Positions 1,025 through 58,870 of a stretch of 64,000 nucleotides of DNA are shown piece after piece. The number at the start of each line of letters is the position of its first letter. Within the stretch, counting starts at the first letter, position 1. Source of the stretch: Macrostomum lignano (taxonomy: Eukaryota); the NCBI GenBank assembly GCA_002269645.1, contig NIVC01001105.1:1-64000 (forward strand), given 5' to 3'. Under the pieces are notes generated by a model. It made no database searches. It worked only from the letters and a program-made list of their open reading frames with translations, and was not told the origin of the DNA. The position numbers and the translations under genes are program-made.

Positions 1025-1284
1025 CTCGTTCGCAAACTTCAGCAAGCGCTCAGCAAACTTCATTAATCCCTGACTAGGATTGAGATCTTGTGTTTTCGGG
1101 AGAGAGGTGAGATCGCGCGAAATTCTGTCGTCACCTGAGATCCGTTTTGCAAAATGAAGGAGACAGGTGCGAACAGGTGGGATCAGTGTTCTGTTGGCTG
1201 ATTTAGCATCCTTCGATTAATGAGAGTAAAGACATTAATTCACAGAGAGCGGGTGCGGTAACTCTACATTTGTGAAAGTGTGCT

Positions 1285-1304
1285 GCAGACAGATAGACAC
1301 ACTA

Positions 1305-1368
<64 letters not shown>

Positions 1369-1374
1369 GACAGC

Positions 1375-1450
<76 letters not shown>
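1285..1450. repeat. (GACA)n microsatellite
   Basis: Direct inspection. Confidence 0.97.
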
Positions 1451-1451
<1 letters not shown>

Positions 1452-1954
1452 GTGACAATAGAATACAAAACTTACTGTAGATCAATCTGCTCAAGCAACA
1501 ATTAAAAATTAGACAACAACCTGCGCCTCGGCGAAGTCAAGGTTTGAAAGGAAGGATTTTACGTCGATATTTCAATAAATTACTCTGTTAGACAGCGCAG
1601 CAGGCAGTCCTTAGTTTGTTGCTTTTTAGTATCCTTGAAACACCGGCGCCTGTACATCAGCTGATACCAATGCCCTTCCTCAGTAGTGGACATCGGCAGT
1701 CATTGGCTGAGCACAGAGTTTTTTTGCATTGCATTTTGCATTGCATTTTCTGCCCCGGTTTCAGTATTTCTGCATTTCTGCACAACTGAGCTAGTTTGGC
1801 ATTTTCGCAGCAACATTTTTTTGCAATGCCTATTGTTCTTCGCCTTTAAAGCCTCTGTCCCATCTGTTCATAAGGAATAGGCAGGGGAAGGGAAGCGATG
1901 TGTGCCTCAGGAAACAGGATCGCGTGTTTTGAATGAGTAGAGAAAGTTTCCATT

Positions 1955-6500: not shown

Positions 6501-9031
6501 AGGCCCCTCTGCTCCACCCGGGTTTGAATGCCGGCCCTGTACTGTCCGAGAATTCCTGCCGCTTCGAAGTGGGCCACGCACTCGGCCAGGCTGGCGGCCG
6601 GAGCCGCCTGCCCGACGGCTGCTGCAGACGCCTCCTCGTCCTCGTCCGACTCGTCTTCCACTGTTTGAAAATTTATTGCAGTTTAACAAGATGAAAAAAA
6701 TCTTTTTTTAGAAGAATTTTGAAAAACTAGCTTTTAAAAAAATTGCCAAGGACCACTGCACTCGTAGTATAGCAGGAGATTATGAAATGGCAAGAAAATA
6801 TTATATGAAAATTTGGGTCTACGACGTTTGCCTGCGGGACGTTTGCCTGCGGGACGTTTGCCAGCCGACATTTGCCAGCCGACGTTTGCCAGCCGACATT
6901 TGCCTGCCGGAAGTTTGCCAGCCAAAATTTGCTAGCCAATATAAAGCCAGTCAGTGAAAAATTTGATACTGAAATATTCGCAGTTTAGCGGTTTGACAAA
7001 AACCATTTTTACTCCAACTTTTTGACAGTTATTCGCATATATACAAGTTTGAAAGCAAAATATATAAACCCAATGTTCATCTTTTGATATGTTGAGCCAA
7101 AATCGTTGGTAAACTAGATATTAGACGTTAGACTGATGAACTGCATAATTTATATATTTTGCTTTCAAACTTGTATATATGCGAATAACCGTCAAAAAGT
7201 TGGAGTAAAAACGGTTTTTGTCAAACCGCTAAACTGCGAATATTTCAGTATCAAATTTTTCACTGACTGGCTTTATATTGGCTAGCAAATTTTGGCTGGC
7301 AAACTTCCGGCAGGCAAACGTCGGCTGGCAAACGTCCCGCAGGCAAACGTCGGCTGGCAAACGTCCCGCAGGCAAACGTCGGCTGGCAAACGTCCCGCAG
7401 GCAAACGTCGGCTGGCAAACGTCCCGCAGGCAAACGTCGGCTGGCAAGCGTCCCGCAGGCAAACGTCGCTATCCCGAAAATTTAAGCTTTACTACACGGC
7501 TAAACATAAAATTGCCAGTTAAAAGAATGACAATCTTCACTGCCCCAGATCAGATGCAATCATTAATATGATTTTTTCCTATCTCCGCAGTGTATTTTTC
7601 CAGGAATTTGGTCCTCAAAAAGTTACACGATCTTTCATTTTTACGTATTGTCACACTATTGTATTGTTGTACAGGGATCCTTTAGCAAAGCGCGTCTCAT
7701 TTCTGCACAGATTTTTTGCGAAGCTTTTTTTAGTCAAAAGCAGCCCGTGCAGCCCATGAATCTGCCTAGCTCAGCAGTTGTACTTTTCTGGAAAAGCAAG
7801 GCCAAATAATCTCACCTTCATCTTTGGCATATTTGAGCGTTACTTGCGGCACATTATTCCAGTCGGAATGACCAGATTCGAGCTCGGGCTGCAGCTCCGC
7901 TGAAGGCGCTTCATCACTGAAGTTGGCCGCGGTGGCGGCTGTGGCATATTTTGAAGGGCTACTCGAGTCGGTCTCTGCTGAGGCGGCTGCGGTTGCCAGC
8001 GACTTAGTGACTGGACTTGGATAACTGGATAGTGGACCAGTAGTAGGTCCAGTTGTAGGACCAGTATGATCAGTTGTAGGAACAGTTGTAGGGCCAGTTG
8101 TAGGGCCAGTTGTAGAGCCAGTAGGACCAGTTTTAGGACCAGTTGTAGGGCCAGTTGTAGGACCAGTAGGACCAGTTGTAGGACCAGTTGTAGGACCAGT
8201 TGTAGGGCCAGTAGGATCAGTTATAGGGCCAGTTGTAGGGCCAGTTGTAGGGCCAGTTGTAGGGCCAGTTGTAGAGCCAGTAGGACCAGTTTTAGGACCA
8301 GTTGTAGGGCCAGTTGTAGGACCAGTAGGACCAGTTGTAGGACCAGTTGTAGGGCCAGTAGGATCAGTTATAGGGCCAGTTGTAGGGCCAGTTGTAGGGC
8401 CAGTTGTAGGACCAGTTGTAGGGCCAGTAGGATCAGTTATAGGGCCAGTTGTAGGGCCAGTTGTAGGGCCAGTTGTAGGGCCAGTTGTAGGGCCAGTTGT
8501 AGGGCCAGTAGGATCAGTTGTGGGACCAGTAGGACCAGTTGTGGGACCATCCCCAGGACCAGTTGTTGAACTCTTAGCGGGGCTATTAATCTCGACAGAT
8601 TTTGCTTCAATTTCTGTCCCAGTTGCCATTTCGACAGCCCCGCCAGCATCCATAGAATCAGCGGTTGGCGCCTCATCGCTGCGCAATCCAGCTAGTAGGT
8701 CGATCGGCTCAAGTCGACTTTGCTGCTCCTGCTCGTTGGTCTGCTCCCGAGCTGCCTGCTGCTGGTCGGCAAAGTTCAGCTGAAAGTCAAATTCGTCGTC
8801 TCCGGCTGCTGACTGCTGCTGCTGCTGCTCAGCCAGTCGGTAGGGGCTGTCGGACCGGGCAATCCCGTAGCCGCTGGTGCCATTGTCGGCGTCAAAGGTT
8901 GTGCTGGCATTTGCTGGCGGCTGAACTGCGGCCGCGTCAAAGTCGACAGCAAAGCCGCGCTGCAGTCCCATGCCAACGTCCTGATCGACGCTGTTGAATC
9001 CGAATGGATCGGCGCTGCGACCGAAGTTCAT
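3519..9031 (-). CDS. ELMOD3: ELMO-domain protein 3-like (ARL/ARF GAP), ~692 aa, 5 coding exons
   Basis: Exons 9031-7816, 6660-6412, 5822-5698, 5012-4676, 3670-3519; all GT-AG with matching phases (1,1,0,1). Spliced product has [15 protein letters not shown] and [20 protein letters not shown] (ELMOD GAP motif with catalytic Arg), plus [12 protein letters not shown] and [10 protein letters not shown]. Start ATG is the least certain point. Confidence 0.88.
4200..4670. repeat. 21-bp G-rich minisatellite (GGGGGCGGAGCGGAGCTGAAT) in ELMOD3 intron 4
   Basis: Tandem copies run to within about 5 nt of the GTGAG donor at 4675. Confidence 0.95.
5040..5522. repeat. 14-bp minisatellite (TTCCCCATCCTCGA) in ELMOD3 intron 3
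   Basis: Near-perfect array ending about 27 nt before the acceptor at 5013-5014. Confidence 0.97.
5915..6386. repeat. ~22-bp minisatellite (CATTGGGTATCTGTGGGTGCCT) in ELMOD3 intron 2
   Basis: Tandem copies starting about 25 nt after the donor at 6411. Confidence 0.95.
6815..7475. mobile_element. Foldback/MITE with long TIRs containing tandem subrepeats and 8-bp TSD (MULE/Phantom- or Merlin-like)
   Basis: GGG...CCC termini; both flanks read GAAAATTT (6807-6814 and 7476-7483); about 250 bp inverted arms (GCTAGCCAATATAAAGCCAGTCAGTGAAAAATTTGATAC and its reverse complement); tandem CGACGTTTGCC subrepeats; no ORF. Superfamily is inference. Confidence 0.85.
8030..8570 (-). repeat. In-frame Thr/Gly/Pro (TTGP)n repeat inside ELMOD3 exon 1
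   Basis: 12-bp-based repeat keeps the minus frame open (ORF 7766-9094). Confidence 0.75.
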
Positions 9032-19986: not shown

Positions 19987-21966
19987 TCAAGCAGCGGCTG
20001 TATCAGCTGCAGCAGCATCTTCGTCTGCGGCAGCCTCCGCAGTCGCCGCGCCTATCGGCGTCTCAACGCCAAAGCTGATCAGCAGGCTGTCCATGTTCTC
20101 AACGAAGCTGCGCATGTCGTCAAGAAACGGTTCCATAGCTGCGTAGATCTGCGAATGCGGCAGTTCGACGTTGCCATAGGCCAGCTTCTCTATCAGCTTG
20201 CTGCGGTAGGGCGACGCCGAGGACACCAGGTTGAATGTTTTGCGCATGAACCAGCCGTGCCGGTGCCTCAGGGTGCAGTCGTAGGCTTTAACGCTGAGCT
20301 CCGAGGTGCCGAAATCTTCCACTCGATCGCGGCTCTCGTATATTAGTGTTAGCAGCTTGCATATATATTCGAGGGCGCGCTTGAACCACAGCAGGCCGAT
20401 GGTCCCGCTTGGGTCTTTCTTGTCCGCTTTTGTGTCCGACTCGCGCTGCAGCAGCTCGCCAATCTGCGGCGGAGGGTGGTATATAAATGTCCGTATAGTC
20501 TAGCTTATGGCAAGCATGATCTTAGTAAGAGATTAAGGCGGAATTCAAATTAATTTCTTAATCCCGAATTAACAACCCGTGTTTTTCAGTGTATTTTTCC
20601 CAGCTTCTTTGGGTAAGAGAGCCTCAGCAATGTCAAGGGTAGGGTGGAGATGTTTCTGACTGTCGCTAGCTGGCACTATGAATCTTACGCTTAAAAAGCT
20701 CAGTAATGGACGGTTATAAGCGCCAGTTTGCAAAGTTTTAACGTCTTGCTGTCCGTCCGCCTTAGTGAATGTTTTGGTGTCATAATGCCTATTGATGCCT
20801 GCTTTATCATCTGCCTGCCTGTCTTAGTGTTTGTCTGTCTGTCTGTCTATCTGTCTTGTTAAACGAGGACGGAACCTGGGAGCTACCCGCGGATCAGCCC
20901 AGAGAAGGGCTTTGCTGCTGAATTATAGTGGGGCTATACTGCCAGGGGCCAAAGCCCGAGAGGCCCAGATTGGGACTAGGACTAAAGGCCTGGTGAAAGC
21001 CTTATTGGGTGCTACTAACCCAAGCCTATGGACTAAGACACCGCCAACCCAACTGTGGAATCAGGGACGGTGCAAGGACCGAATCCACCCAAGCCACCCC
21101 CCCAATGACAAAACCCGTGTGTGTGCGCAAAAAATTTCCAAAAGTTTTGGAAAGCGGTTCGAGAGCGGGAGAACCCGAAGTCTACGGAAAGATGCTTTAG
21201 ATTGGGGCGAGTCTGGGCAGCTAGTTTACCAAGGATGAGTTTCCTGTCAGGTAGGCCCCTCGGAAGACCTCCTATAGGGCTGCAAGCCTCAAGGCTTTTT
21301 CGCTATCGAGCTCTAATAAGGCCAGGCCAAGGGGTCGGAGAGAGGGCACAAACCAGACTCAGCCGGTTTTCCCCGATTCGGGACGAACATCAACCCCAGG
21401 ACACCAATCCAATGTCAGAGATGAGAGCCAAGACACAATAAGCAGGGAGACTACCAGAGGAGCCAGCAGATGGACCAAGGCGAGCAAGATGGACCAGGAA
21501 GTGCAGAGCTCATAACTCAAAAGATTGGGCGGCTGAAATGCCAGGGATAAAAGCACAAAGCTAAAACACAAAGGACTAAAAAATGACCTGAACCCTTATT
21601 CTGGGGCTCAGCCTCAGGGCTGGCATCTAATGGGCTCTACCGTACATTTTGTGAATGGTCGTCTTTCCTGCAGGGCGGGTACGACCGGGGGACTCAAGTC
21701 CCGATCTAGCCACACTGCAGTCCAGAGTCCCACTCACTCCAGGTACACCCTCCTAAACCAAGGCAGGGCCGAAAATTAGAAAAAGTACAGGGTCTATTTT
21801 TAGATGTGTACATCGCCTCCGGCGAGGACACTTAAGATTGGGCTACTCGATAGATAGGCCAATTGGATTGCGCACAACCCGAGAAATGCCGCCAGAAGGC
21901 AGCCAGGGCAAAAGCAGTTAGAGACCGTCTTTACGGCTATTACGTCTATCTGTCTTAGTGTCTAAC

Positions 21967-22061
<95 letters not shown>

Positions 22062-24793
22062 ATCTAACACTCGGAAACATTATTGTTACCGCACTCGCTC
22101 TAGTTTTACTGTCATCAACTAGATGCTATAGAATCCCAGGTGACGACAGAATTTCGCCAATCTAGCTCCTCCTCTGAAAACTCAAGATCTTAATCTAGCC
22201 AGGGATTAACCCTCAAACGATAAATGGGGTCCATTGTACCCCACAGAGAAATAAGCAAATAAAATAACTAATTCTAGGGTCTGTATATGCACGTAAAGTA
22301 ATAACACTGTCATGTACAGAAGCTTCAATAATTAAGCTTATTCGGTTTCTGATTTATGGGGTCCATTGGACCCCAAGTATCTATGGCCAAGTATATAATA
22401 AGTGAATGTCTATGGCCAATGCACCAGCAATAAAGGCCATTGCAAAGCAAACCTCATTACTTTCGACCACGCCAGCTTTGACAAAAAGTTTTTCTGACGC
22501 TGTAGTGCCGCTTCTACGTTGTGACAAGGATGGCCAGACCAATGCGGGAAGCCAAATCTCGTGCGCTGTAGACAATTCTTTCTCAAGACGTTAGCATTCC
22601 CGATGCACATGTTGACTTAAAAGAGTCTGACCAAGAGGAAGCTCTGTCTGACATCGAGGAGGCGGAGCTTGAGGTGGAGCTTCATGGTGCTCCCGGAAGC
22701 TCATCCAGTGACTCTTCCAGGACGGAGTCACCAGAGCCTGCAGCACAGGCCGGAAATGTGGCCGGAACTGTGGGCCATCGCTACGTGAGCCCAAGCGGTC
22801 AGGCCTGGAGCACGAATCCACCACCACGAGTTGGGCAGAGGCCAGCAGCCAACATTCTGCGTCTCCGGCCTGGCATAACGCAGTTCGCCGCAGCAAGACT
22901 GCATGATGAAGAGTCTGCCTTCAAACTCCTGTTTGACACCGACATGGTTGTCATTGTTGTCGAAACGAATCGAGAGGCCACTAGAGTTCTCGGTCGCGCC
23001 TGGTCTCCAACAACAAGAGACGAGATATACTGCTACATCGGCCTTTGCATCCAAGGTGTATTCAAGGGCATATGGAGAGCATTGAGGAGCTTTGGAGCAA
23101 GGACTATGGGTGAAAGATCTTCTCCGAGACGATGAGCTTGTCTCGCTTGAAGAGCCTTCTCCATTTCCTTCGTTTTGACAACCGAGTAACGAGGGAAGCG
23201 CGGCTGCTGAGAGACAAGCTTGCAGCTGTTCGCCTCCTGCTCGATGGATTTGTGAGCAACTCCCAAAAGTGTTATGTTCCATCTGGAGCGGTGACAGTTG
23301 ATGAACAACTATTCCCTTACCGAGGCCGCTGCCGGTACATCCAGTACATGCCAATGAAGCGGGCAAAGTACGGTCTCAAGTTCTGGTGCCTGAACGATGC
23401 AGCCAACGCCTACTGCTGGAACCTGGAGATGTATGCCGGACGTGACGAGCATCAAGAGGTCAGTCTTGGTGAACATGTGGTGCTGAAGTTGGCTGAAGGC
23501 CTGCGAGGATCAGGTATAGGGATCACGGTGGACAATTTTTTCTGCTCACTCAGCCTGGCACGAAGTCTTCAACACTGGAACCTTACTCTTCTAGGCAGCA
23601 TGCGAGCACATCGCCAAGAGGTGCCGCTGCAGATGCGAACCTGCCGAGGCAGGTAGCTTCACTCAACTGAATTTGCCTACACGGAAGAGGACAAAATTCA
23701 GTTGGCTACATACAAGGCCAAGGCAAATAAGCTGGTGCTGATTCTGTCATCGCAGCACAGCAGTCCACACATTTCGACGCATCCAGCCCAGAAGCCTCAG
23801 GTCATCCTCGACTACAATGCAACGAAGGGTGGCACAGACCTGATGGATCAGATGACATCCTTGTACTCAACTAAGTACAAGTCGAGGCGCTGGCATGTGG
23901 CAGTGTTTTGCAACCTTCTGAACATCGCCAGTCTGTACGCTTTTCTGCTCCACGAGGCTGTCTTTCCAAACAGCTAATGCTCCCTATCGACGCAGGCTAT
24001 ATCTGGTGGCATTGGGCAAGACTTTGACGCAGCCACTGAGGCACCAGGTAGAAGCTGTTAGGCACATGCCCGCTTCAGCACTTGCAGTTCAGAAGGGCAG
24101 GTGCCACCTGTGCAGCCGCTCAGCTGACCGCAAGACGCGAACGCGATGTGCCAACTGTCAGAAGCATTGCTGCGCTGAGCACTTGGAACAAATATGCCAG
24201 GCCTGCATTGGGGACAATGCAGCTAAGTGATTTTATCCTGCAGTCATTTACCATTTACAGATTTAGTTTTCGTGATGTTTTTGCAATTTTAGCCTCCCCA
24301 TTGAGTTTTATTTATGCAGTTCAGCCACGACAGTGACAAATAGGCAAAATTGGCTTGCTATCATGCTCCAGATAATAACTTTTTAATAAATAGCGTTTAT
24401 ACTGAGCCAGTAATAATTATGTTAGCCTTTAATAAACTAATAATGACTGATTTAACTTATCATTAATGAAGTCTATCAGTCAGTCGGAACAGTCTCAGTC
24501 AGCCTCAAAGCAGCAATCTCAGGCACTATTATTATCACAGCACCAAAAACACTCACCGTCCGTCGTTCGTTGGGCTCAGCTTCAAACGAGTTGCGGATCT
24601 TTTTTAGATTTCCGGCAACATCGTTGCGCACGGGCTTGAAAGCGAAGCCGAGCAAATCAAAGAATTCAATTAGCAAAGCGCCGACGTCGCACATTTTCTC
24701 AACATTAATGTCGCGACCGTGATCCTTACTGAAGACTATGCTCCAATCAACGGCGTGAAAGAAACTTATCGGCTTGGCTCCCGCTGCTGTCAT
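19987..24793 (-). CDS. GLTP: Glycolipid transfer protein family (GLTP/FAPP2-like), 237 aa, 2 exons
   Basis: Exons 24793-24557 and 20463-19987, phase 0; FFDLLGFAFKPVRNDVAGNLKKI, GLLWFKRALEYI, AYDCTLRHRHGWFMRKTF, SPYRSKLIEKL are GLTP signature segments (D, N, K, W, R, H of the headgroup site). Confidence 0.9.
20862..21937 (-). pseudogene. Decayed ~350-codon reading frame capped by a spliced-leader-like 24-mer, inserted in a GACA/GATA microsatellite
   Basis: Minus strand starts GCCGTAAAGACGGTCTCTAACTGC (21937-21914); one frame reads as protein-like hydrophobic sequence across the element, interrupted by stops many of which are explicable as CAG/CAA/CGA to TAG/TAA/TGA; AAGACAGATAGAC on both sides. 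Product not recognised. Confidence 0.55.
21945..22062. repeat. (GTCT)n microsatellite
   Basis: Direct inspection. Confidence 0.95.
22210..24230 (+). mobile_element. Decayed piggyBac (PGBD4-like) transposon in GLTP intron; left end only
   Basis: TTAA|CCCT left terminus at 22206-22213; GGGGTCCATTG(T/G)ACCCC motif twice; ORF pieces with VDEQLFPYRGRC, KYGLKFW, VDNFF, YNATKGGTDLMDQ (DDD triad) and C-terminal Cys-rich CHLC...CANC...C..H...C..C; several stops and frameshifts; no right TIR found before the GLTP exon. Confidence 0.9.
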
Positions 24794-24919
24794 GGCTGGC
24801 CGTGGTGCTGCAGATAATTGATAGTGAGCAAAATTGCTGAGATGTGGTGGGGGAATTACTGAAATGCTTTGGCTGTTGGGGGGATTGATGAAATGTCAAA
24901 GCTCACATTTTAGTGTCTG

Positions 24920-25138
24920 TTATACTGTCTTTCTGTCTGTCTTAGTGTCTTTCTGTCCCTCTGTCTGTCTTAGTGTCTTTCTGTCTCTGTCTGTCTGTCA
25001 GTATCTGTCTCTCACTGTCTGACTCTCACTAATCTGTCTTAGTGTTTTTCGTCTGATGTCTCTCTTTCTGCCTGTCTTAGTGTCTGTCTGTCTGTCTGTC
25101 TGTCACTCTCTCTCTCTCTGTGTCACCCTCTCTCTCTC

Positions 25139-25229
<91 letters not shown>

Positions 25230-25380
25230 GACTATCTTAGTGTCTATCTGTCTGACTGTCTCTCTGTCTGCCTGTCTTAGTGTCTGTCTATCTGTGTTAG
25301 TGTCTATCTGTCTTAGTGTCTGTCTATCTGTCTTAGTGTCTGTCTATCTGTCTCAGTGTCTGACTGTTTCTCTGTCTGTG
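24920..25380. repeat. Compound (GTCT)n/(CT)n low-complexity tract
   Basis: Direct inspection. Confidence 0.9.
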
Positions 25381-25721
25381 TTTACTTGGACATTTCGTCA
25401 GTATTTTTCCCTCCTTACATGGATCACCAATGTTATCTGGACCCCCCTTACATGGTCCACTCTATATTTCTTCGACATAAAAAGCTAAAACTTTTTAAAT
25501 AGACCTAAAATGGAGTCTAACAAATTTTAAATAGACCTAAAAATGGAGTCTAACAAAGGTGGTCCTCAAAGTTGCTCATTCAAAGTGCTGTTGGTTCCAA
25601 GTTACAAGAGTTTCAGTTTACTTGGATCCTTCACGCGGTCCATCTAAACCGAGGTCCACGAAAATCAAAATTTCCCACAACCCATTTTCAAAAAATGGTG
25701 TCTGTTTTGTATCTGTTAGGC

Positions 25722-40689: not shown

Positions 40690-41740
40690 TCTTGTGTAGA
40701 TTCAGGTGACTCTTTTGTAGTTTCAGGTGACTCTTTTGTAGTTTCAGGTGACTCTTGTAGTTTCAGGTGACTCGTGTGTAGTTTCAGGTGACTCTTTTGT
40801 AGTTTCAGGTGACTCTTTTGTAGTTTCAGGTGACTCTTTTGTAGTTTCAGGTGACTCTTTTGTAGTTTCAGGTGACTCGTGTGTAGTTTCAGGTGACTCT
40901 TTTGTAGTTTCAGGTGACTCGTGTGTAGTTTCAGGTGACTCTTTTGTAGTTTCAGGTGACTCGTGTGTAGTTTCAGGTGACTCTTGTGTAGTTTCAGGTG
41001 ACTCTTGTGTAGTTTCAGGTGACTCTTGTGTAGTTTCAGGTGACTCTTGTGTAGTTTCGGGTGACTCTTGTGTAGTTTCGGCTGACTCTTGTGTAGTTTC
41101 GGCTGACTTTTGTGTAGTTTCATGTGACTCTTGTGTAGTTTCAGGTGACTCTTGTGTAGTTTCAGGTGACTCGTGTGTAGTTTCGGGGGACTCTTGTGTA
41201 GTTTCGGCTGACTTTTGTGTAGTTTCATGTGACTCTTGTGTAGTTTCGGGTGACTCTTGTGTAGTTTCGGGTGACTCTTGTGTAGTTTCGGGTGACTCTT
41301 GTGTAGTTTCGGGTGACTCTTGTGTAGTTTCGGGTGACTCTTGTGTAGCTTCGGGTGACTCTTGTGTAGCTTCGGCTGACTTTTGTGTAGCTTCAGGTGA
41401 CTCTTGTGTAGTTTCGGGTGACTCTTGTGTAGTTTCGGGGGACTCTTGTGTAGCTTCGGGTGACTCTTGTGTAGCTTCGGGTGACTCTTGTGTAGCTTCA
41501 GGTGACTCTTGTGTAGTTTCGGGTGACTCTTGTGTAGCTTCAGGTGACTCTTGTGTAGTTTCGAGTGACTTGTGTAGTTTCGGATGACTCTTGTGTAGCT
41601 TCGGGTGACTCTTGTGTAGTTTCGGGTGACTCTTGTGTAGTTTTGGGTGACTTGTGTAGTTTTGAGTGACTCTTGTGTAGTTTCGGGTGACTCTTGTGTA
41701 GTTTGGGGTGACTCTTGTGTAGTTTTGGGTGACTTGTGTA
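40690..41740. repeat. 21-bp minisatellite (GTAGTTTCAGGTGACTCTTGT) upstream of the ARMC6 acceptor
   Basis: About 50 copies, with a gradient of variants along the array. Confidence 0.97.
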
Positions 41741-57107: not shown

Positions 57108-57394
57108 CCTCGTGTCGCACTGCTCGCTGATCGTCTGCTCGCAGCTGCTGTCCGCCTTTTTTCTGCTCCTGCAATTGTTGAGAACGCTGGCGAGCTTGCT
57201 GCACCGAGTTGCATAAACTCCTCCTCTCTTTGTCTGGCTCTCTCCATTCCTCTCATTCCATTGAGCTCACTCGCTTTCTTATTATGCGTGTCTGCGCGAC
57301 CTCGCGCACTTCAGGCCGAGTGGGTTAGAGGGGTACCCGGTGCAAGGACCTCTAGATATAAATCTTTAGACTGGAGGCCTAAACTTCATCAATC

Positions 57395-58870
57395 CTTAAC
57401 TTCACCAATCCTAAACTTCACTAATACTAAACTTCACTAATCCTAAACTTCACTAATCCTAAACTTCACTAATCCTAAACTTCACTAATCCTAAGCTTCA
57501 CTAATCCTAAACTTCACTAATCCTAAACTTCACTAATCCTAAACTTCACTAATCCTTAACTTCACTAATCTTAAACTTCATCAATCCTTAACTTCACTAA
57601 TCATAAACTTCACCAATCCTAAACTTCACTAATCTTAAACTTCACCAATCCTTAACTTCACTAATCATAAACTTCACCAATCCTAAACTTCACTAATCCT
57701 AAACTTCACCAATCCTAAACTTCACTAATCTTAAACTTCATCAATCCTTAACTTCACTAATCCTTAACTTCACTAATCTTAAACTTCACCAATCCTAAAC
57801 TTTACTAATCCTAAACTTCACTAATCCTAAACTTCACTAATCCTAAACTTCACTAATCCTTAACTTCACTAATCTTAAACTTCACTAATCTTAAACTTCA
57901 TCAATCCTTAACTTCACTAATCCTTAACTTTACTAATCCTAAACTTTACTAATCCTTAACTTCACCAATCCTAAACTTCACTAATCCTTAACTTTACTAA
58001 TCCTAAACTTTACTAATCCTTAACTTCACTAATCCTAAACTTCACCAATCCTAAACTTCACTAATCCTAAACTTCAGTAATCCTTTACTTCACTAATCTT
58101 AAACTTCATCAATCCTTAACTTCACTAATCCTTAACTTCACTAATCTTAAACTTCACCAATCCTAAACTTTACTAATCCTAAACTTCACTAATCCTAAAC
58201 TTCACTGATCCTAAACTTCACTAATCCTAAACTTCACCAATCCTTAACTTCACTAATCTTAAACTTCACCAATACTAAACTTCACTAATCCTAAACTTCA
58301 CTAATCCTTAACTTCACCAATCCTAAACTTCACTAATCCTTAACTTTACTAATCCTAAACTTTACTAATCCTTAACTTCACTAATCCTAAACTTCACCAA
58401 TCCTAAACTTCACTAATCCTAAACTTCAGTAATCCTTTACTTCACTAATCTTAAACTTCATCAATCCTTAACTTCACTAATCCTTAACTTCACTAATCTT
58501 AAACTTCACCAATCCTAAACTTTACTAATCCTAAACTTCACTAATCCTAAACTTCACTGATCCTAAACTTCACTAATCCTAAACTTCACCAATCCTTAAC
58601 TTCACTAATCTTAAACTTCACCAATACTAAACTTCACTAATCCTAAACTTCACTAATACTTTACTTCACTAATCTTAAACTTCATCAATCCTTAACTTCA
58701 CTAATCCTTAACTTCACTAATCTTAAACTTCACCAATCCTAAACTTTACTAATCCTAAACTTCACTAATCCTAAACTTCACTAATCCTAAACTTCATCAA
58801 TCCTTAACTTCACTAATCCTAGACTTCACTAATCCTTAACTTCACTAATACCAAAATTCACTAATCCGAA
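57395..58870. repeat. 16-bp minisatellite (CTAATCCTAAACTTCA), ~1.5 kb
   Basis: Direct inspection; higher-order repetition of variant blocks visible. Confidence 0.97.

What the first reader, a model, noticed from the sequence alone, without database searches (positions are those of the whole stretch)
20862..21937. Retro-inserted element capped by the 5' half of the flatworm spliced leader
Seen: the minus strand starts GCCGTAAAGACGGTCTCTAACTGC (a CCGT-loop-ACGG hairpin) and runs into a ~1.05-kb stop-riddled but single-frame, hydrophobic, protein-like sequence; the whole sits inside a GACA/GATA microsatellite (AAGACAGATAGAC on both sides) in the GLTP intron, with no poly(A). Known (from memory, must be verified): flatworm spliced leaders begin with this CCGT...ACGGT hairpin, and the Macrostomum lignano SL is CCGTAAAGACGGTCTCTTACTGCGAAGACTCAATTTATTGCATG, a 22/23 match. 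The odd point is that the 5' half is kept and the 3' half with the AUG is missing, the reverse of an ordinary retrocopied trans-spliced mRNA. Inference: an SL-RNA/mRNA template-switch chimera (like U6-L1 chimeras), an SL-targeting or SL-headed retroelement (NeSL-like logic), or an undescribed SL variant.
Basis: partly seen in the sequence, partly recalled or inferred. Interest (0 to 1): 0.8.

Follow-up and report, generated by a model that had tools for sequence, protein, structure and literature searches.

The report
Fossil retrocopy with half spliced leader
A 1.09-kb stretch of non-coding DNA, copied long ago from RNA into an intron of a Macrostomum lignano gene, starts with exactly the first 24 of the 45 bases of the worm's spliced-leader RNA. 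It is a dead, neutrally drifting relic, of interest mainly as a record of a reverse transcriptase picking up a small nuclear RNA.

Summary
The core observation holds. On the minus strand, 21937-21914 reads GCCGTAAAGACGGTCTCTAACTGC. That is 23/24 identical to nt 1-24 of the published Macrostomum spliced leader, including the +1 G. It heads a 1,086-bp insert (20858-21943) bracketed by AAGACAGATAGAC, with no poly(A). The insert lies in the single intron of a GLTP gene.

The window is M. lignano NIVC01001105.1. Two other ~98%-identical copies of the locus carry the same insert and the same junction, so it is real, old and drifting neutrally.

The "protein-like, single-frame" claim fails. Stop counts match shuffled sequence, and there is no Pfam, Rfam, tRNA or credible protein homologue.

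Similarity to a genuine SL RNA gene stops at nt 24, the last G-C pair of stem I.

My best reading (about 0.4): a target-primed retrocopy in which the reverse transcriptase jumped from the copied RNA into an open stretch of SL RNA and ran to its cap. U5/L1 and U3/L1 chimeras form this way.

The main rival (about 0.25): an off-target copy of an element that lives inside SL RNA genes and is transcribed from their promoter, as SLACS and NeSL are.

I could not search the M. lignano genome, and that search is the decisive test. Interest is moderate.

The parts
21944..21956 (-). Upstream copy of the 13-bp direct repeat AAGACAGATAGAC (putative target-site duplication)
   Evidence: Exact match. Sequence context.
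21938..21943 (-). Six filler bases, GTAATA, between the repeat and the SL +1 G. They do not match the upstream flank of a real SL RNA gene (AACTCTTT in L001).
   Evidence: Identical in all three copies of the locus.
21914..21937 (-). Head: copy of SL RNA nt 1-24 (GCCGTAAAGACGGTCTCTAACTGC). It is 23/24 identical to the Macrostomum SL, with T19A.
20858..21913 (-). Body: 1,056 nt of non-coding sequence of unknown origin. It starts TTTTGCCC and ends GTTTAAC. It has no poly(A), no ORF signal and no homologue.
20845..20857 (-). Downstream copy of AAGACAGATAGAC. Its first five bases, AAGAC, equal SL nt 26-30.
21957..22059 (-). (AGAC)n microsatellite in which the insert sits. The same repeat type continues at 20809-20856.
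22060..22198 (-). Repeat 'X', which carries the (AGAC)n array at its 3' side. A second copy lies at about 1100-1300 (+). It is context only, not part of the insert.
   Evidence: X1 against X2 scores 20, against 10.3 +/- 2.0 for shuffles.
19987..24805 (-). Host GLTP gene (BOX15_Mlig032270g1), with exons at 24805-24557 and 20463-19987. The insert is in its single intron, in sense orientation.

Best explanation
This is a dead, RNA-mediated insertion in three parts: SL RNA nt 1-24, four T's, and a 1.05-kb non-coding body.

Proposed sequence of events:
1. A retrotransposon reverse transcriptase nicked the (AGAC)n-type microsatellite and primed on the 3' end of the body RNA.
2. It copied that RNA to its 5' end.
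3. It then switched template into SL RNA, entering at the A/U-rich open top of stem I (nt 25-40).
4. It ran on to the capped +1 G.
5. The 5' junction was sealed with six filler bases. Staggered cuts left the 13-bp duplication.

The TTTT at the junction may be non-templated A's added to the cDNA, or a U-tail on an SL RNA fragment.

What is shown: the head is SL nt 1-24 starting at +1; homology ends at nt 24; the body is non-coding; the insert is old and evolving neutrally.

What is inferred: target-primed reverse transcription, the template switch, and the entry point in the RNA.
For: - The head is 23/24 identical to SL nt 1-24 and begins at the same G that begins the SL exon in a real gene.
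- The 13-bp flanking repeat and the filler at the 5' junction only are classic features of target-primed reverse transcription.
- Homology to a bona fide SL RNA gene (metagenome contig L001) stops exactly at nt 24.
- In the predicted SL RNA fold, nt 16-24 pair with the splice-donor region. C24-G41 is the last G-C pair and nt 25-40 form the weak apical part.
- In mammals, U5/L1 and U3/L1 chimeras carry 3'-truncated snRNA heads formed by internal template switching. The snRNA truncation points also cluster in single-stranded segments (PMC4476161).
- Three ~98%-identical copies of the locus share the junction, so this is not an assembly artefact.
- Variable sites make up 1.6% of the insert, against about 1% in the neighbouring piggyBac remnant and 2% in exon 2. 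There is no sign of constraint.
Against: - The parent of the body is unknown. I could not show that it exists elsewhere without an SL head.
- No poly(A) or recognisable LINE 3' end marks the body as a substrate for retrotransposition.
- The body's 3' end does not resemble the (AGAC)n-tailed repeat X next to it.
- There is no microhomology between SL nt 25-28 and the body's start.
- The SL break is followed in the SL by GAAGAC, and the target duplication starts AAGAC. A pure template switch does not predict that coincidence, whereas the rival model does.
- The stem I boundary rests on the minimum-free-energy fold of a single sequence from a related species.
Confidence: 0.4

Rival explanations
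1. An off-target or non-autonomous copy of a retroelement family that lives inside SL RNA genes. The family would insert after SL nt 24 and be transcribed from the SL RNA promoter, so its RNA starts with SL nt 1-24. This is the logic of SLACS/CZAR/CRE in trypanosomatids and NeSL-1 in nematodes. Here the RNA would have landed in a microsatellite site that mimics the SL target (AAGAC).
For: - Keeping the 5' part of the SL and losing the 3' part is exactly what a promoter-driven co-transcript of an interrupted SL gene predicts.
- In the SL the break is followed by GAAGAC, and the duplicated target here begins AAGAC, preceded by ACT (compare SL ...ACTGC|GAAGAC).
- SL exons are a known target of site-specific non-LTR elements. 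The NeSL-related LIN/R5 lineage in flatworms has diversified its targets to 28S, tRNA-Arg and tRNA-Glu genes (PMC4640811).
- The absence of poly(A) fits R2/NeSL-type elements.
Against: - This copy has no reverse transcriptase or endonuclease ORF, and no protein signal at all.
- No second copy occurs in 64 kb plus about 22 kb of unrelated M. lignano DNA.
- The rest of the SL does not follow the 3' end. Only 5 nt match and G25 is missing.
- The AAGAC match was noticed after the fact, in an AGAC-rich microsatellite.
- No SL-specific element has been reported in flatworms.
Confidence: 0.25
2. An ordinary retrocopy of a trans-spliced RNA (full 45-nt SL plus transcript) that later lost SL nt 25-45, adjacent sequence and its poly(A) through deletions.
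For: - SL-bearing retrocopies exist. The M. lignano sequence first published as 'SL RNA' maps to the 5' end of a protein-coding gene in the genome (PMC8629364).
- Partial leader sequences next to LTR and LINE elements are common in parasitic flatworm genomes, at 597 loci (PMC12582326).
- The insert is old enough to have suffered deletions.
Against: - It needs a deletion breakpoint inside a 45-nt target and a separate loss of the poly(A).
- The head is only 1/24 diverged, yet the body matches no annotated M. lignano protein.
- All three copies of the locus share the same junction, so any deletion was early.
Confidence: 0.1
3. Read on the plus strand, the insert is TG...CA, then AAA, then the reverse complement of SL nt 1-24. 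That layout resembles an LTR followed by a primer-binding site. It would be strong-stop DNA of an LTR retroelement primed by a 24-nt SL RNA fragment and captured at a break, or a 5' LTR plus primer-binding-site remnant.
For: - A non-coding unit of about 1.06 kb fits an LTR.
- The plus-strand ends are TG and CA, with a 3-nt spacer before the SL-complementary block. The copy ends exactly at the primer's 5' end.
- Internally cleaved RNAs can serve as primers. Copia uses a tRNA half (my own knowledge).
Against: - A 13-bp duplication is unlike the 4-6 bp left by integrases.
- The filler lies at the SL end, as expected for the 5' end of a target-primed insertion.
- There is no terminal inverted repeat beyond TG/CA, and no TATA or AATAAA motif on either strand.
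- No retroelement is known to use SL RNA as a primer.
- TG and CA are weak evidence, with roughly a few percent probability by chance.
Confidence: 0.05
4. A functional or recently functional variant SL RNA gene, or other SL-like small RNA gene.
For: - The 5' CCGT...ACGG hairpin half is the part most conserved among flatworm SLs (my own knowledge).
- Rfam cannot judge either way. It does not detect even the genuine Macrostomum SL RNA gene.
Against: - There is no ATG-ending exon, no GTAAG donor, and no similarity to the Sm-site or 3' hairpin region of a real gene.
- T19A breaks the pairing with the donor.
- The upstream flank is a microsatellite, not a promoter.
- Divergence among the copies is neutral.
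Confidence: 0.02

Closest known systems
snRNA/LINE chimeric retrocopies made by reverse-transcriptase template switching (U6/L1, and especially U5/L1 and U3/L1)
   Same: - A small Sm-class nuclear RNA forms the 5' head, starting at its own +1.
- The head is joined directly to an unrelated RNA copy.
- The whole unit is flanked by one target-site duplication.
- In U5 and U3 chimeras the small RNA is 3'-truncated at single-stranded segments (PMC4476161).
   Different: - The head is an SL RNA, which mammals do not have.
- Only 24 nt are kept.
- The 3' partner is not a recognisable LINE and has no poly(A).
- The responsible retrotransposon in M. lignano is unknown.
SL-gene-specific non-LTR retrotransposons (SLACS, CZAR, CRE1/2 in trypanosomatids; NeSL-1 in C. 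elegans)
   Same: The 5' part of the SL exon lies directly upstream of the element body, as expected for elements inserted in the SL exon and transcribed from the SL promoter. There may also be target mimicry (AAGAC).
   Different: - No RT or endonuclease ORF.
- Not located in an SL RNA gene.
- The remainder of the SL does not follow the 3' end.
- Only a single copy was seen.
- No such family is known in flatworms.
Genomic SL relics from retroposed trans-spliced transcripts (dinoflagellate 'recycled cDNAs'; partial-leader loci next to LTR/LINE elements in parasitic flatworms)
   Same: SL sequence is encoded in the genome at the 5' end of a retroposed unit. Calvelo et al. 2025 report 597 partial-leader loci associated with mobile elements.
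   Different: Those cases are explained by trans-splicing and so keep the 3' (splice-junction) end of the SL. Here the 3' 21 nt, including the ATG, are missing and the cap-proximal half is kept.

Membership tests
Functional Macrostomum SL RNA gene | Complete 45-nt SL exon ending in ATG, followed by a GTAAG splice donor | tested here: not met
   Only nt 1-24 are present. The alignment to the real gene in L001 ends at nt 24. The SL 3' half is absent from the window.
Functional Macrostomum SL RNA gene | Intron part with an Sm-like site and 3' hairpins, and exon-donor pairing in stem I | tested here: not met
   No similarity beyond nt 24. T19A disrupts the UCUUAC/GUAAGA pairing seen in the fold of the real gene. 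The first 150 nt fold no better than shuffles (z = -1.5).
Processed retrocopy of a trans-spliced mRNA | Full SL at the 5' end, joined to the transcript at the trans-splice site | tested here: not met
   24 of 45 nt. The junction is not at the SL 3' end.
Processed retrocopy of a trans-spliced mRNA | Poly(A) tail and a body derived from a coding parent | tested here: not met
   No poly(A). Coding signal equals shuffles. No protein or Pfam hits.
Target-primed (LINE-mediated) retro-insertion | Target-site duplication of about 7-20 bp flanking the insert | tested here: inconclusive
   Exact 13-bp repeats abut the insert. The same 13-mer recurs in a related minisatellite at 25302 and 25322. No empty site was available, because all three copies of the locus are filled.
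snRNA/LINE template-switch chimera | Small-RNA head begins at its transcription start (+1) | tested here: met
   The head starts with the G that starts the SL in M. cliftonense transcripts and in the L001 gene.
snRNA/LINE template-switch chimera | The 3' partner is a LINE, SINE or other RNA shown to be retrotransposed on its own | not testable with these tools
   The M. lignano genome could not be searched. No other copy was found in the window or in L005. There is no similarity to the 3' end of repeat X.
SL-gene-specific non-LTR retrotransposon (SLACS/CRE/NeSL type) | Encodes a reverse transcriptase and endonuclease | tested here: not met
   No Pfam domain in six frames, and no protein homologue. 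At most this copy could be a non-autonomous derivative.
SL-gene-specific non-LTR retrotransposon (SLACS/CRE/NeSL type) | Many copies inserted at one position of SL RNA genes, flanked by both SL parts | not testable with these tools
The synteny route through the ATPase-beta gene next to the SL gene of L001 gave no M. lignano hit. Here only AAGAC (5 nt) follows the 3' end.
LTR / strong-stop DNA with primer-binding site | TG...CA termini, a 4-6-bp duplication, and a primer-binding site complementary to a tRNA | tested here: not met
   TG and CA are present on the plus strand. However, the duplication is 13 bp and the 'primer-binding site' is complementary to SL nt 1-24, not to a tRNA.

The most novel reading that the evidence does not exclude
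The insert is a stray copy of a so-far undescribed flatworm retroelement family. That family would reside in SL RNA genes after nt 24 and hijack the SL RNA promoter, so every transcript begins with half a spliced leader. It would be a third, independent invention of the SLACS/NeSL strategy and the first in Platyhelminthes.
Probability: 0.25. Interest if true: 0.7.

Novelty: new variant of a known kind. Interest (0 to 1): 0.4.

Why it matters
- If it is a template-switch chimera, it shows that flatworm retrotransposon reverse transcriptases capture the SL RNA as mammalian L1 captures U5, U3 and U6. SL heads would then be usable markers of retrotransposition history in trans-splicing animals.
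- Half-SL heads are also a trap for pipelines that locate SL RNA genes or SL-bearing retrogenes by BLAST.
- If it derives instead from an SL-gene-resident element, it would reveal a new site-specific retrotransposon lineage that parasitises the trans-splicing machinery of a regeneration model organism.
- For the GLTP host gene it is simply intronic ballast.

Tried and rejected
1. Decayed coding sequence. Six-frame translation, comparison with shuffles, Pfam, a 2,173-aa six-frame query against 5.8 billion proteins, and phmmer of the longest ORF against 1.84 billion representatives. All negative or chance.
2. Known RNA family or tRNA-derived SINE. Rfam at gathering and E <= 10 thresholds, and ARAGORN, were all negative. 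Rfam also misses the true SL RNA gene.
3. Other copies. None in the window, in an unrelated M. lignano locus or in viral contigs. The single metagenome hit is an intact SL RNA gene, not a copy of the insert.
4. Empty site. The two other M. lignano copies of the GLTP locus both carry the insert.
5. Reaching the M. lignano SL loci through synteny with the ATPase-beta gene beside the SL gene of L001. No M. lignano orthologue was returned.
6. Exact look-ups of window ORFs in the contig index. Not on record.
7. Shared 3' end with the (AGAC)n-tailed repeat X, which would point to a common stringent-LINE partner. Similarity is at shuffle level.
8. Special RNA structure at the ends of the insert. z-scores are about -1.5.
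9. Cryptic splice donor at SL nt 24|25. The sequence is C|GA, not GU (read directly from the sequence).

Full report
WHAT IS THERE

Read on the minus strand, the region runs as follows:
- an (AGAC)n microsatellite (22059-21957);
- AAGACAGATAGAC (21956-21944);
- GTAATA (21943-21938);
- GCCGTAAAGACGGTCTCTAACTGC (21937-21914);
- 1,056 nt of unique sequence, starting TTTTGCCC and ending GTTTAAC (21913-20858);
- AAGACAGATAGAC again (20857-20845);
- more AGAC-type repeat.

There is no poly(A).

Grudniewska et al. give the M. lignano consensus as CCGTAAAGACGGTCTCTTACTGCGAAGACTCAATTTATTGCATG (PMC5173321). The M. cliftonense SL assembled from reads carries one more 5' G (PMC10468722 supplement). The head therefore equals SL nt 1-24 at 23 of 24 positions, leading G included. 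By my own arithmetic a match this good is expected about 3e-8 times by chance in both strands of the window. The SL 17-mer occurs only once in the window, and the SL 3' half is absent even with three mismatches.

WHERE IT IS

A GLTP query built from the flanking exons hit M. lignano proteins at E = 4e-144. Fetching their contigs showed that locus L004 (NIVC01001105.1, 9987-34805, reversed) is 100% identical to the window at those same coordinates. The window is therefore the first 64 kb of that Mlig_3_7 contig.

The GLTP gene (BOX15_Mlig032270g1) has two coding exons on the minus strand, 24805-24557 and 20463-19987. Its single 4.1-kb intron holds three things:
- a decayed piggyBac-type transposon (TTAA at 22195-22198; PF13843 spread over three frames);
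- a small repeat, 'X', ending in the (AGAC)n array, with a second copy at about 1100-1300;
- the SL-headed insert, in the same orientation as the gene.

REAL, OLD AND NEUTRAL

Two further contigs carry the same locus: NIVC01000445.1 (L002) and NIVC01001106.1 (L003). They are 98.2% and 97.8% identical to the window over the 1.6 kb around the insert. Both have the identical junction AAGACAGATAGAC-GTAATA-GCCGTAAAGACGGTCTCTAACTGCTTTTGCC. This rules out an assembly artefact and dates the insertion, and the T19A change, before these copies diverged. It also means I had no empty site to compare.

Across the three copies, the insert shows 17 variable sites in 1,092 columns. The piggyBac-containing stretch shows 21 in about 2,150 ungapped columns, and exon 2 shows 9 in 454. 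Nothing suggests constraint on the insert.

WHAT THE BODY IS NOT

All six frames carry 10-16 stops, and the longest open stretch is 126 codons. In 500 composition-matched random sequences, 71% had a frame with as few stops as the best observed frame, and 29% had an open stretch at least as long. Other searches gave:
- no Pfam family in any frame at E <= 1;
- nothing at E <= 1e-3 among 5.8 billion proteins for a concatenated six-frame query;
- two hits for the longest ORF against 1.84 billion representatives, which are about 27-bit segments repeated five times in a repetitive subject, and so chance;
- nothing credible from Rfam, though Rfam also fails to detect a genuine Macrostomum SL RNA gene;
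- no tRNA and no other copy in the window.

The 'protein-like, single-frame' part of the finding is therefore rejected.

COMPARISON WITH A REAL SL RNA GENE

It holds an intact Macrostomum-type SL RNA gene:

GCCGTAAAGACGGTCTCTTACTGCGAAGACTCAATTTATTGCATG|GTAAGACACCGGTGATCCAATTCTGGATCAGTATTTTTAGCAGCCCTTTCATGGGCTTCC

The insert aligns to it over nt 1-24 and nowhere else. The gene's upstream flank (AACTCTTT) differs from GTAATA. So the copy starts at the RNA's first base and not in flanking DNA. That is the main argument for an RNA intermediate whose reverse transcription ran to the cap.

Folding the SL RNA pairs nt 16-24 with the donor region (UCUUAC with GUAAGA, UGC with GCA). C24-G41 is the last G-C pair, and nt 25-40 form the A/U-rich top. 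The break at 24|25 thus falls where the stable helix gives way to an open segment. This rests on a single-sequence prediction, although exon-donor pairing in stem I is a general feature of SL RNAs (my own knowledge).

MECHANISM

The 13-bp duplication, the clean 3' junction, the filler at the 5' junction and the 5' end at an RNA cap site together fit target-primed reverse transcription. Two routes can produce a half-SL head.

(a) Template switching. The enzyme copies the body RNA and then jumps into SL RNA. Doucet et al. show that U5/L1 and U3/L1 chimeras carry 3'-truncated snRNA heads, because switching into these Sm-class RNAs is internal. They also show that snRNA truncation points cluster in single-stranded segments (PMC4476161). 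That is the pattern seen here. The TTTT at the junction could be non-templated A's on the cDNA or a U-tail on an SL fragment (inference).

(b) Co-transcription. An element resident in SL RNA genes after nt 24 is transcribed from the SL promoter, as for SLACS/CZAR/CRE and NeSL-1. SL exons are a documented target class, and the NeSL-related LIN/R5 lineage has diversified its targets in flatworms (PMC4640811). In favour of (b), the SL continues GAAGAC after the break and the duplicated target begins AAGAC. That could be target mimicry or priming by read-through sequence. However, it is only 5 nt, was noticed after the fact, and lies in an AGAC-rich repeat. Against (b), this copy has no ORF and I saw no second copy.

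I rate (a) at about 0.4 and (b) at about 0.25.

Less likely readings:
- Later deletion from a full SL retrocopy (0.1). Such retrocopies exist in this genome, and partial leaders near transposons are common in parasitic flatworms.
- A plus-strand reading as an LTR plus primer-binding site, or strong-stop DNA primed by an SL fragment (0.05). TG...CA-AAA-revcomp(SL 1-24) is suggestive, but the 13-bp duplication and the position of the filler argue against it, and no promoter or poly(A) motifs are present.
- A functional SL variant (0.02).

LIMITS

I could not search the M. lignano genome for the body or for interrupted SL genes.
- The synteny route to the M. lignano SL loci failed.
- An unrelated 22-kb M. 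lignano locus held nothing relevant.
- The 3' end of the body does not resemble that of the neighbouring (AGAC)n-tailed repeat X, so I could not tie it to a partner LINE.

VERDICT

The object is a fossil SL-RNA-headed retrocopy. It is a new variant of known chimeric or SL-relic retrocopies, with a one-in-four chance of pointing to an SL-gene-resident retroelement family. A genome-wide BLAST would settle this quickly.

Noticed in passing
window 22195-24230 (+): Decayed piggyBac-type DNA transposon in the same GLTP intron. It has a TTAA target, a terminal CCCTCAAACG... repeat with sub-terminal GGGGTCCATTG repeats, and a transposase (PF13843) broken across three frames. I did not find the 3' end of the element.
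   Followed up: partly
window 1100-1460 (+) and 21957-22198 (-): Two homologous copies of a short repeat, 'X' (...GCGAAATTCTGTCGTCACCTG...AGAGCGRGTGCGGTAAC...). Each is followed by a long (AGAC)n array, which suggests a retroelement or SINE family with a simple-repeat tail. Related ACACTAAGACAGATAGAC minisatellites lie at 24900-25400.
   Followed up: partly
L001 (JGI metagenome contig Ga0302322_100095745), 615-720: An environmental metagenome contig carries an intact Macrostomum-type SL RNA gene with a 45-nt exon identical to the published SL. It lies about 1 kb upstream of a Na/K-ATPase beta-subunit gene. A partial duplicate of the SL start (GCCGTAAACTCTTT) sits immediately upstream of +1.
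   Followed up: partly
L002, L003, L004 (= window 9987-34805): The GLTP/G-alpha/Erf4 region exists as three ~98%-identical copies on separate Mlig_3_7 contigs, all sharing the same transposon insertions. This is consistent with the recent genome or large-chromosome duplication reported for M. lignano.
   Followed up: partly
window 6881-7336: Near-perfect inverted repeat: 188-nt arms, 98% complementary, 80-nt spacer. It could be a MITE or a foldback element.
   Followed up: no
window 57250-58720, 40727-41650, 1950-2850 and elsewhere: Very dense micro- and minisatellites, including arrays with 16-nt and 21-nt periods of 80-90 units and about 0.9 kb of (GATA)n. They generate many long spurious ORFs in the mechanical ORF list.
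   Followed up: no
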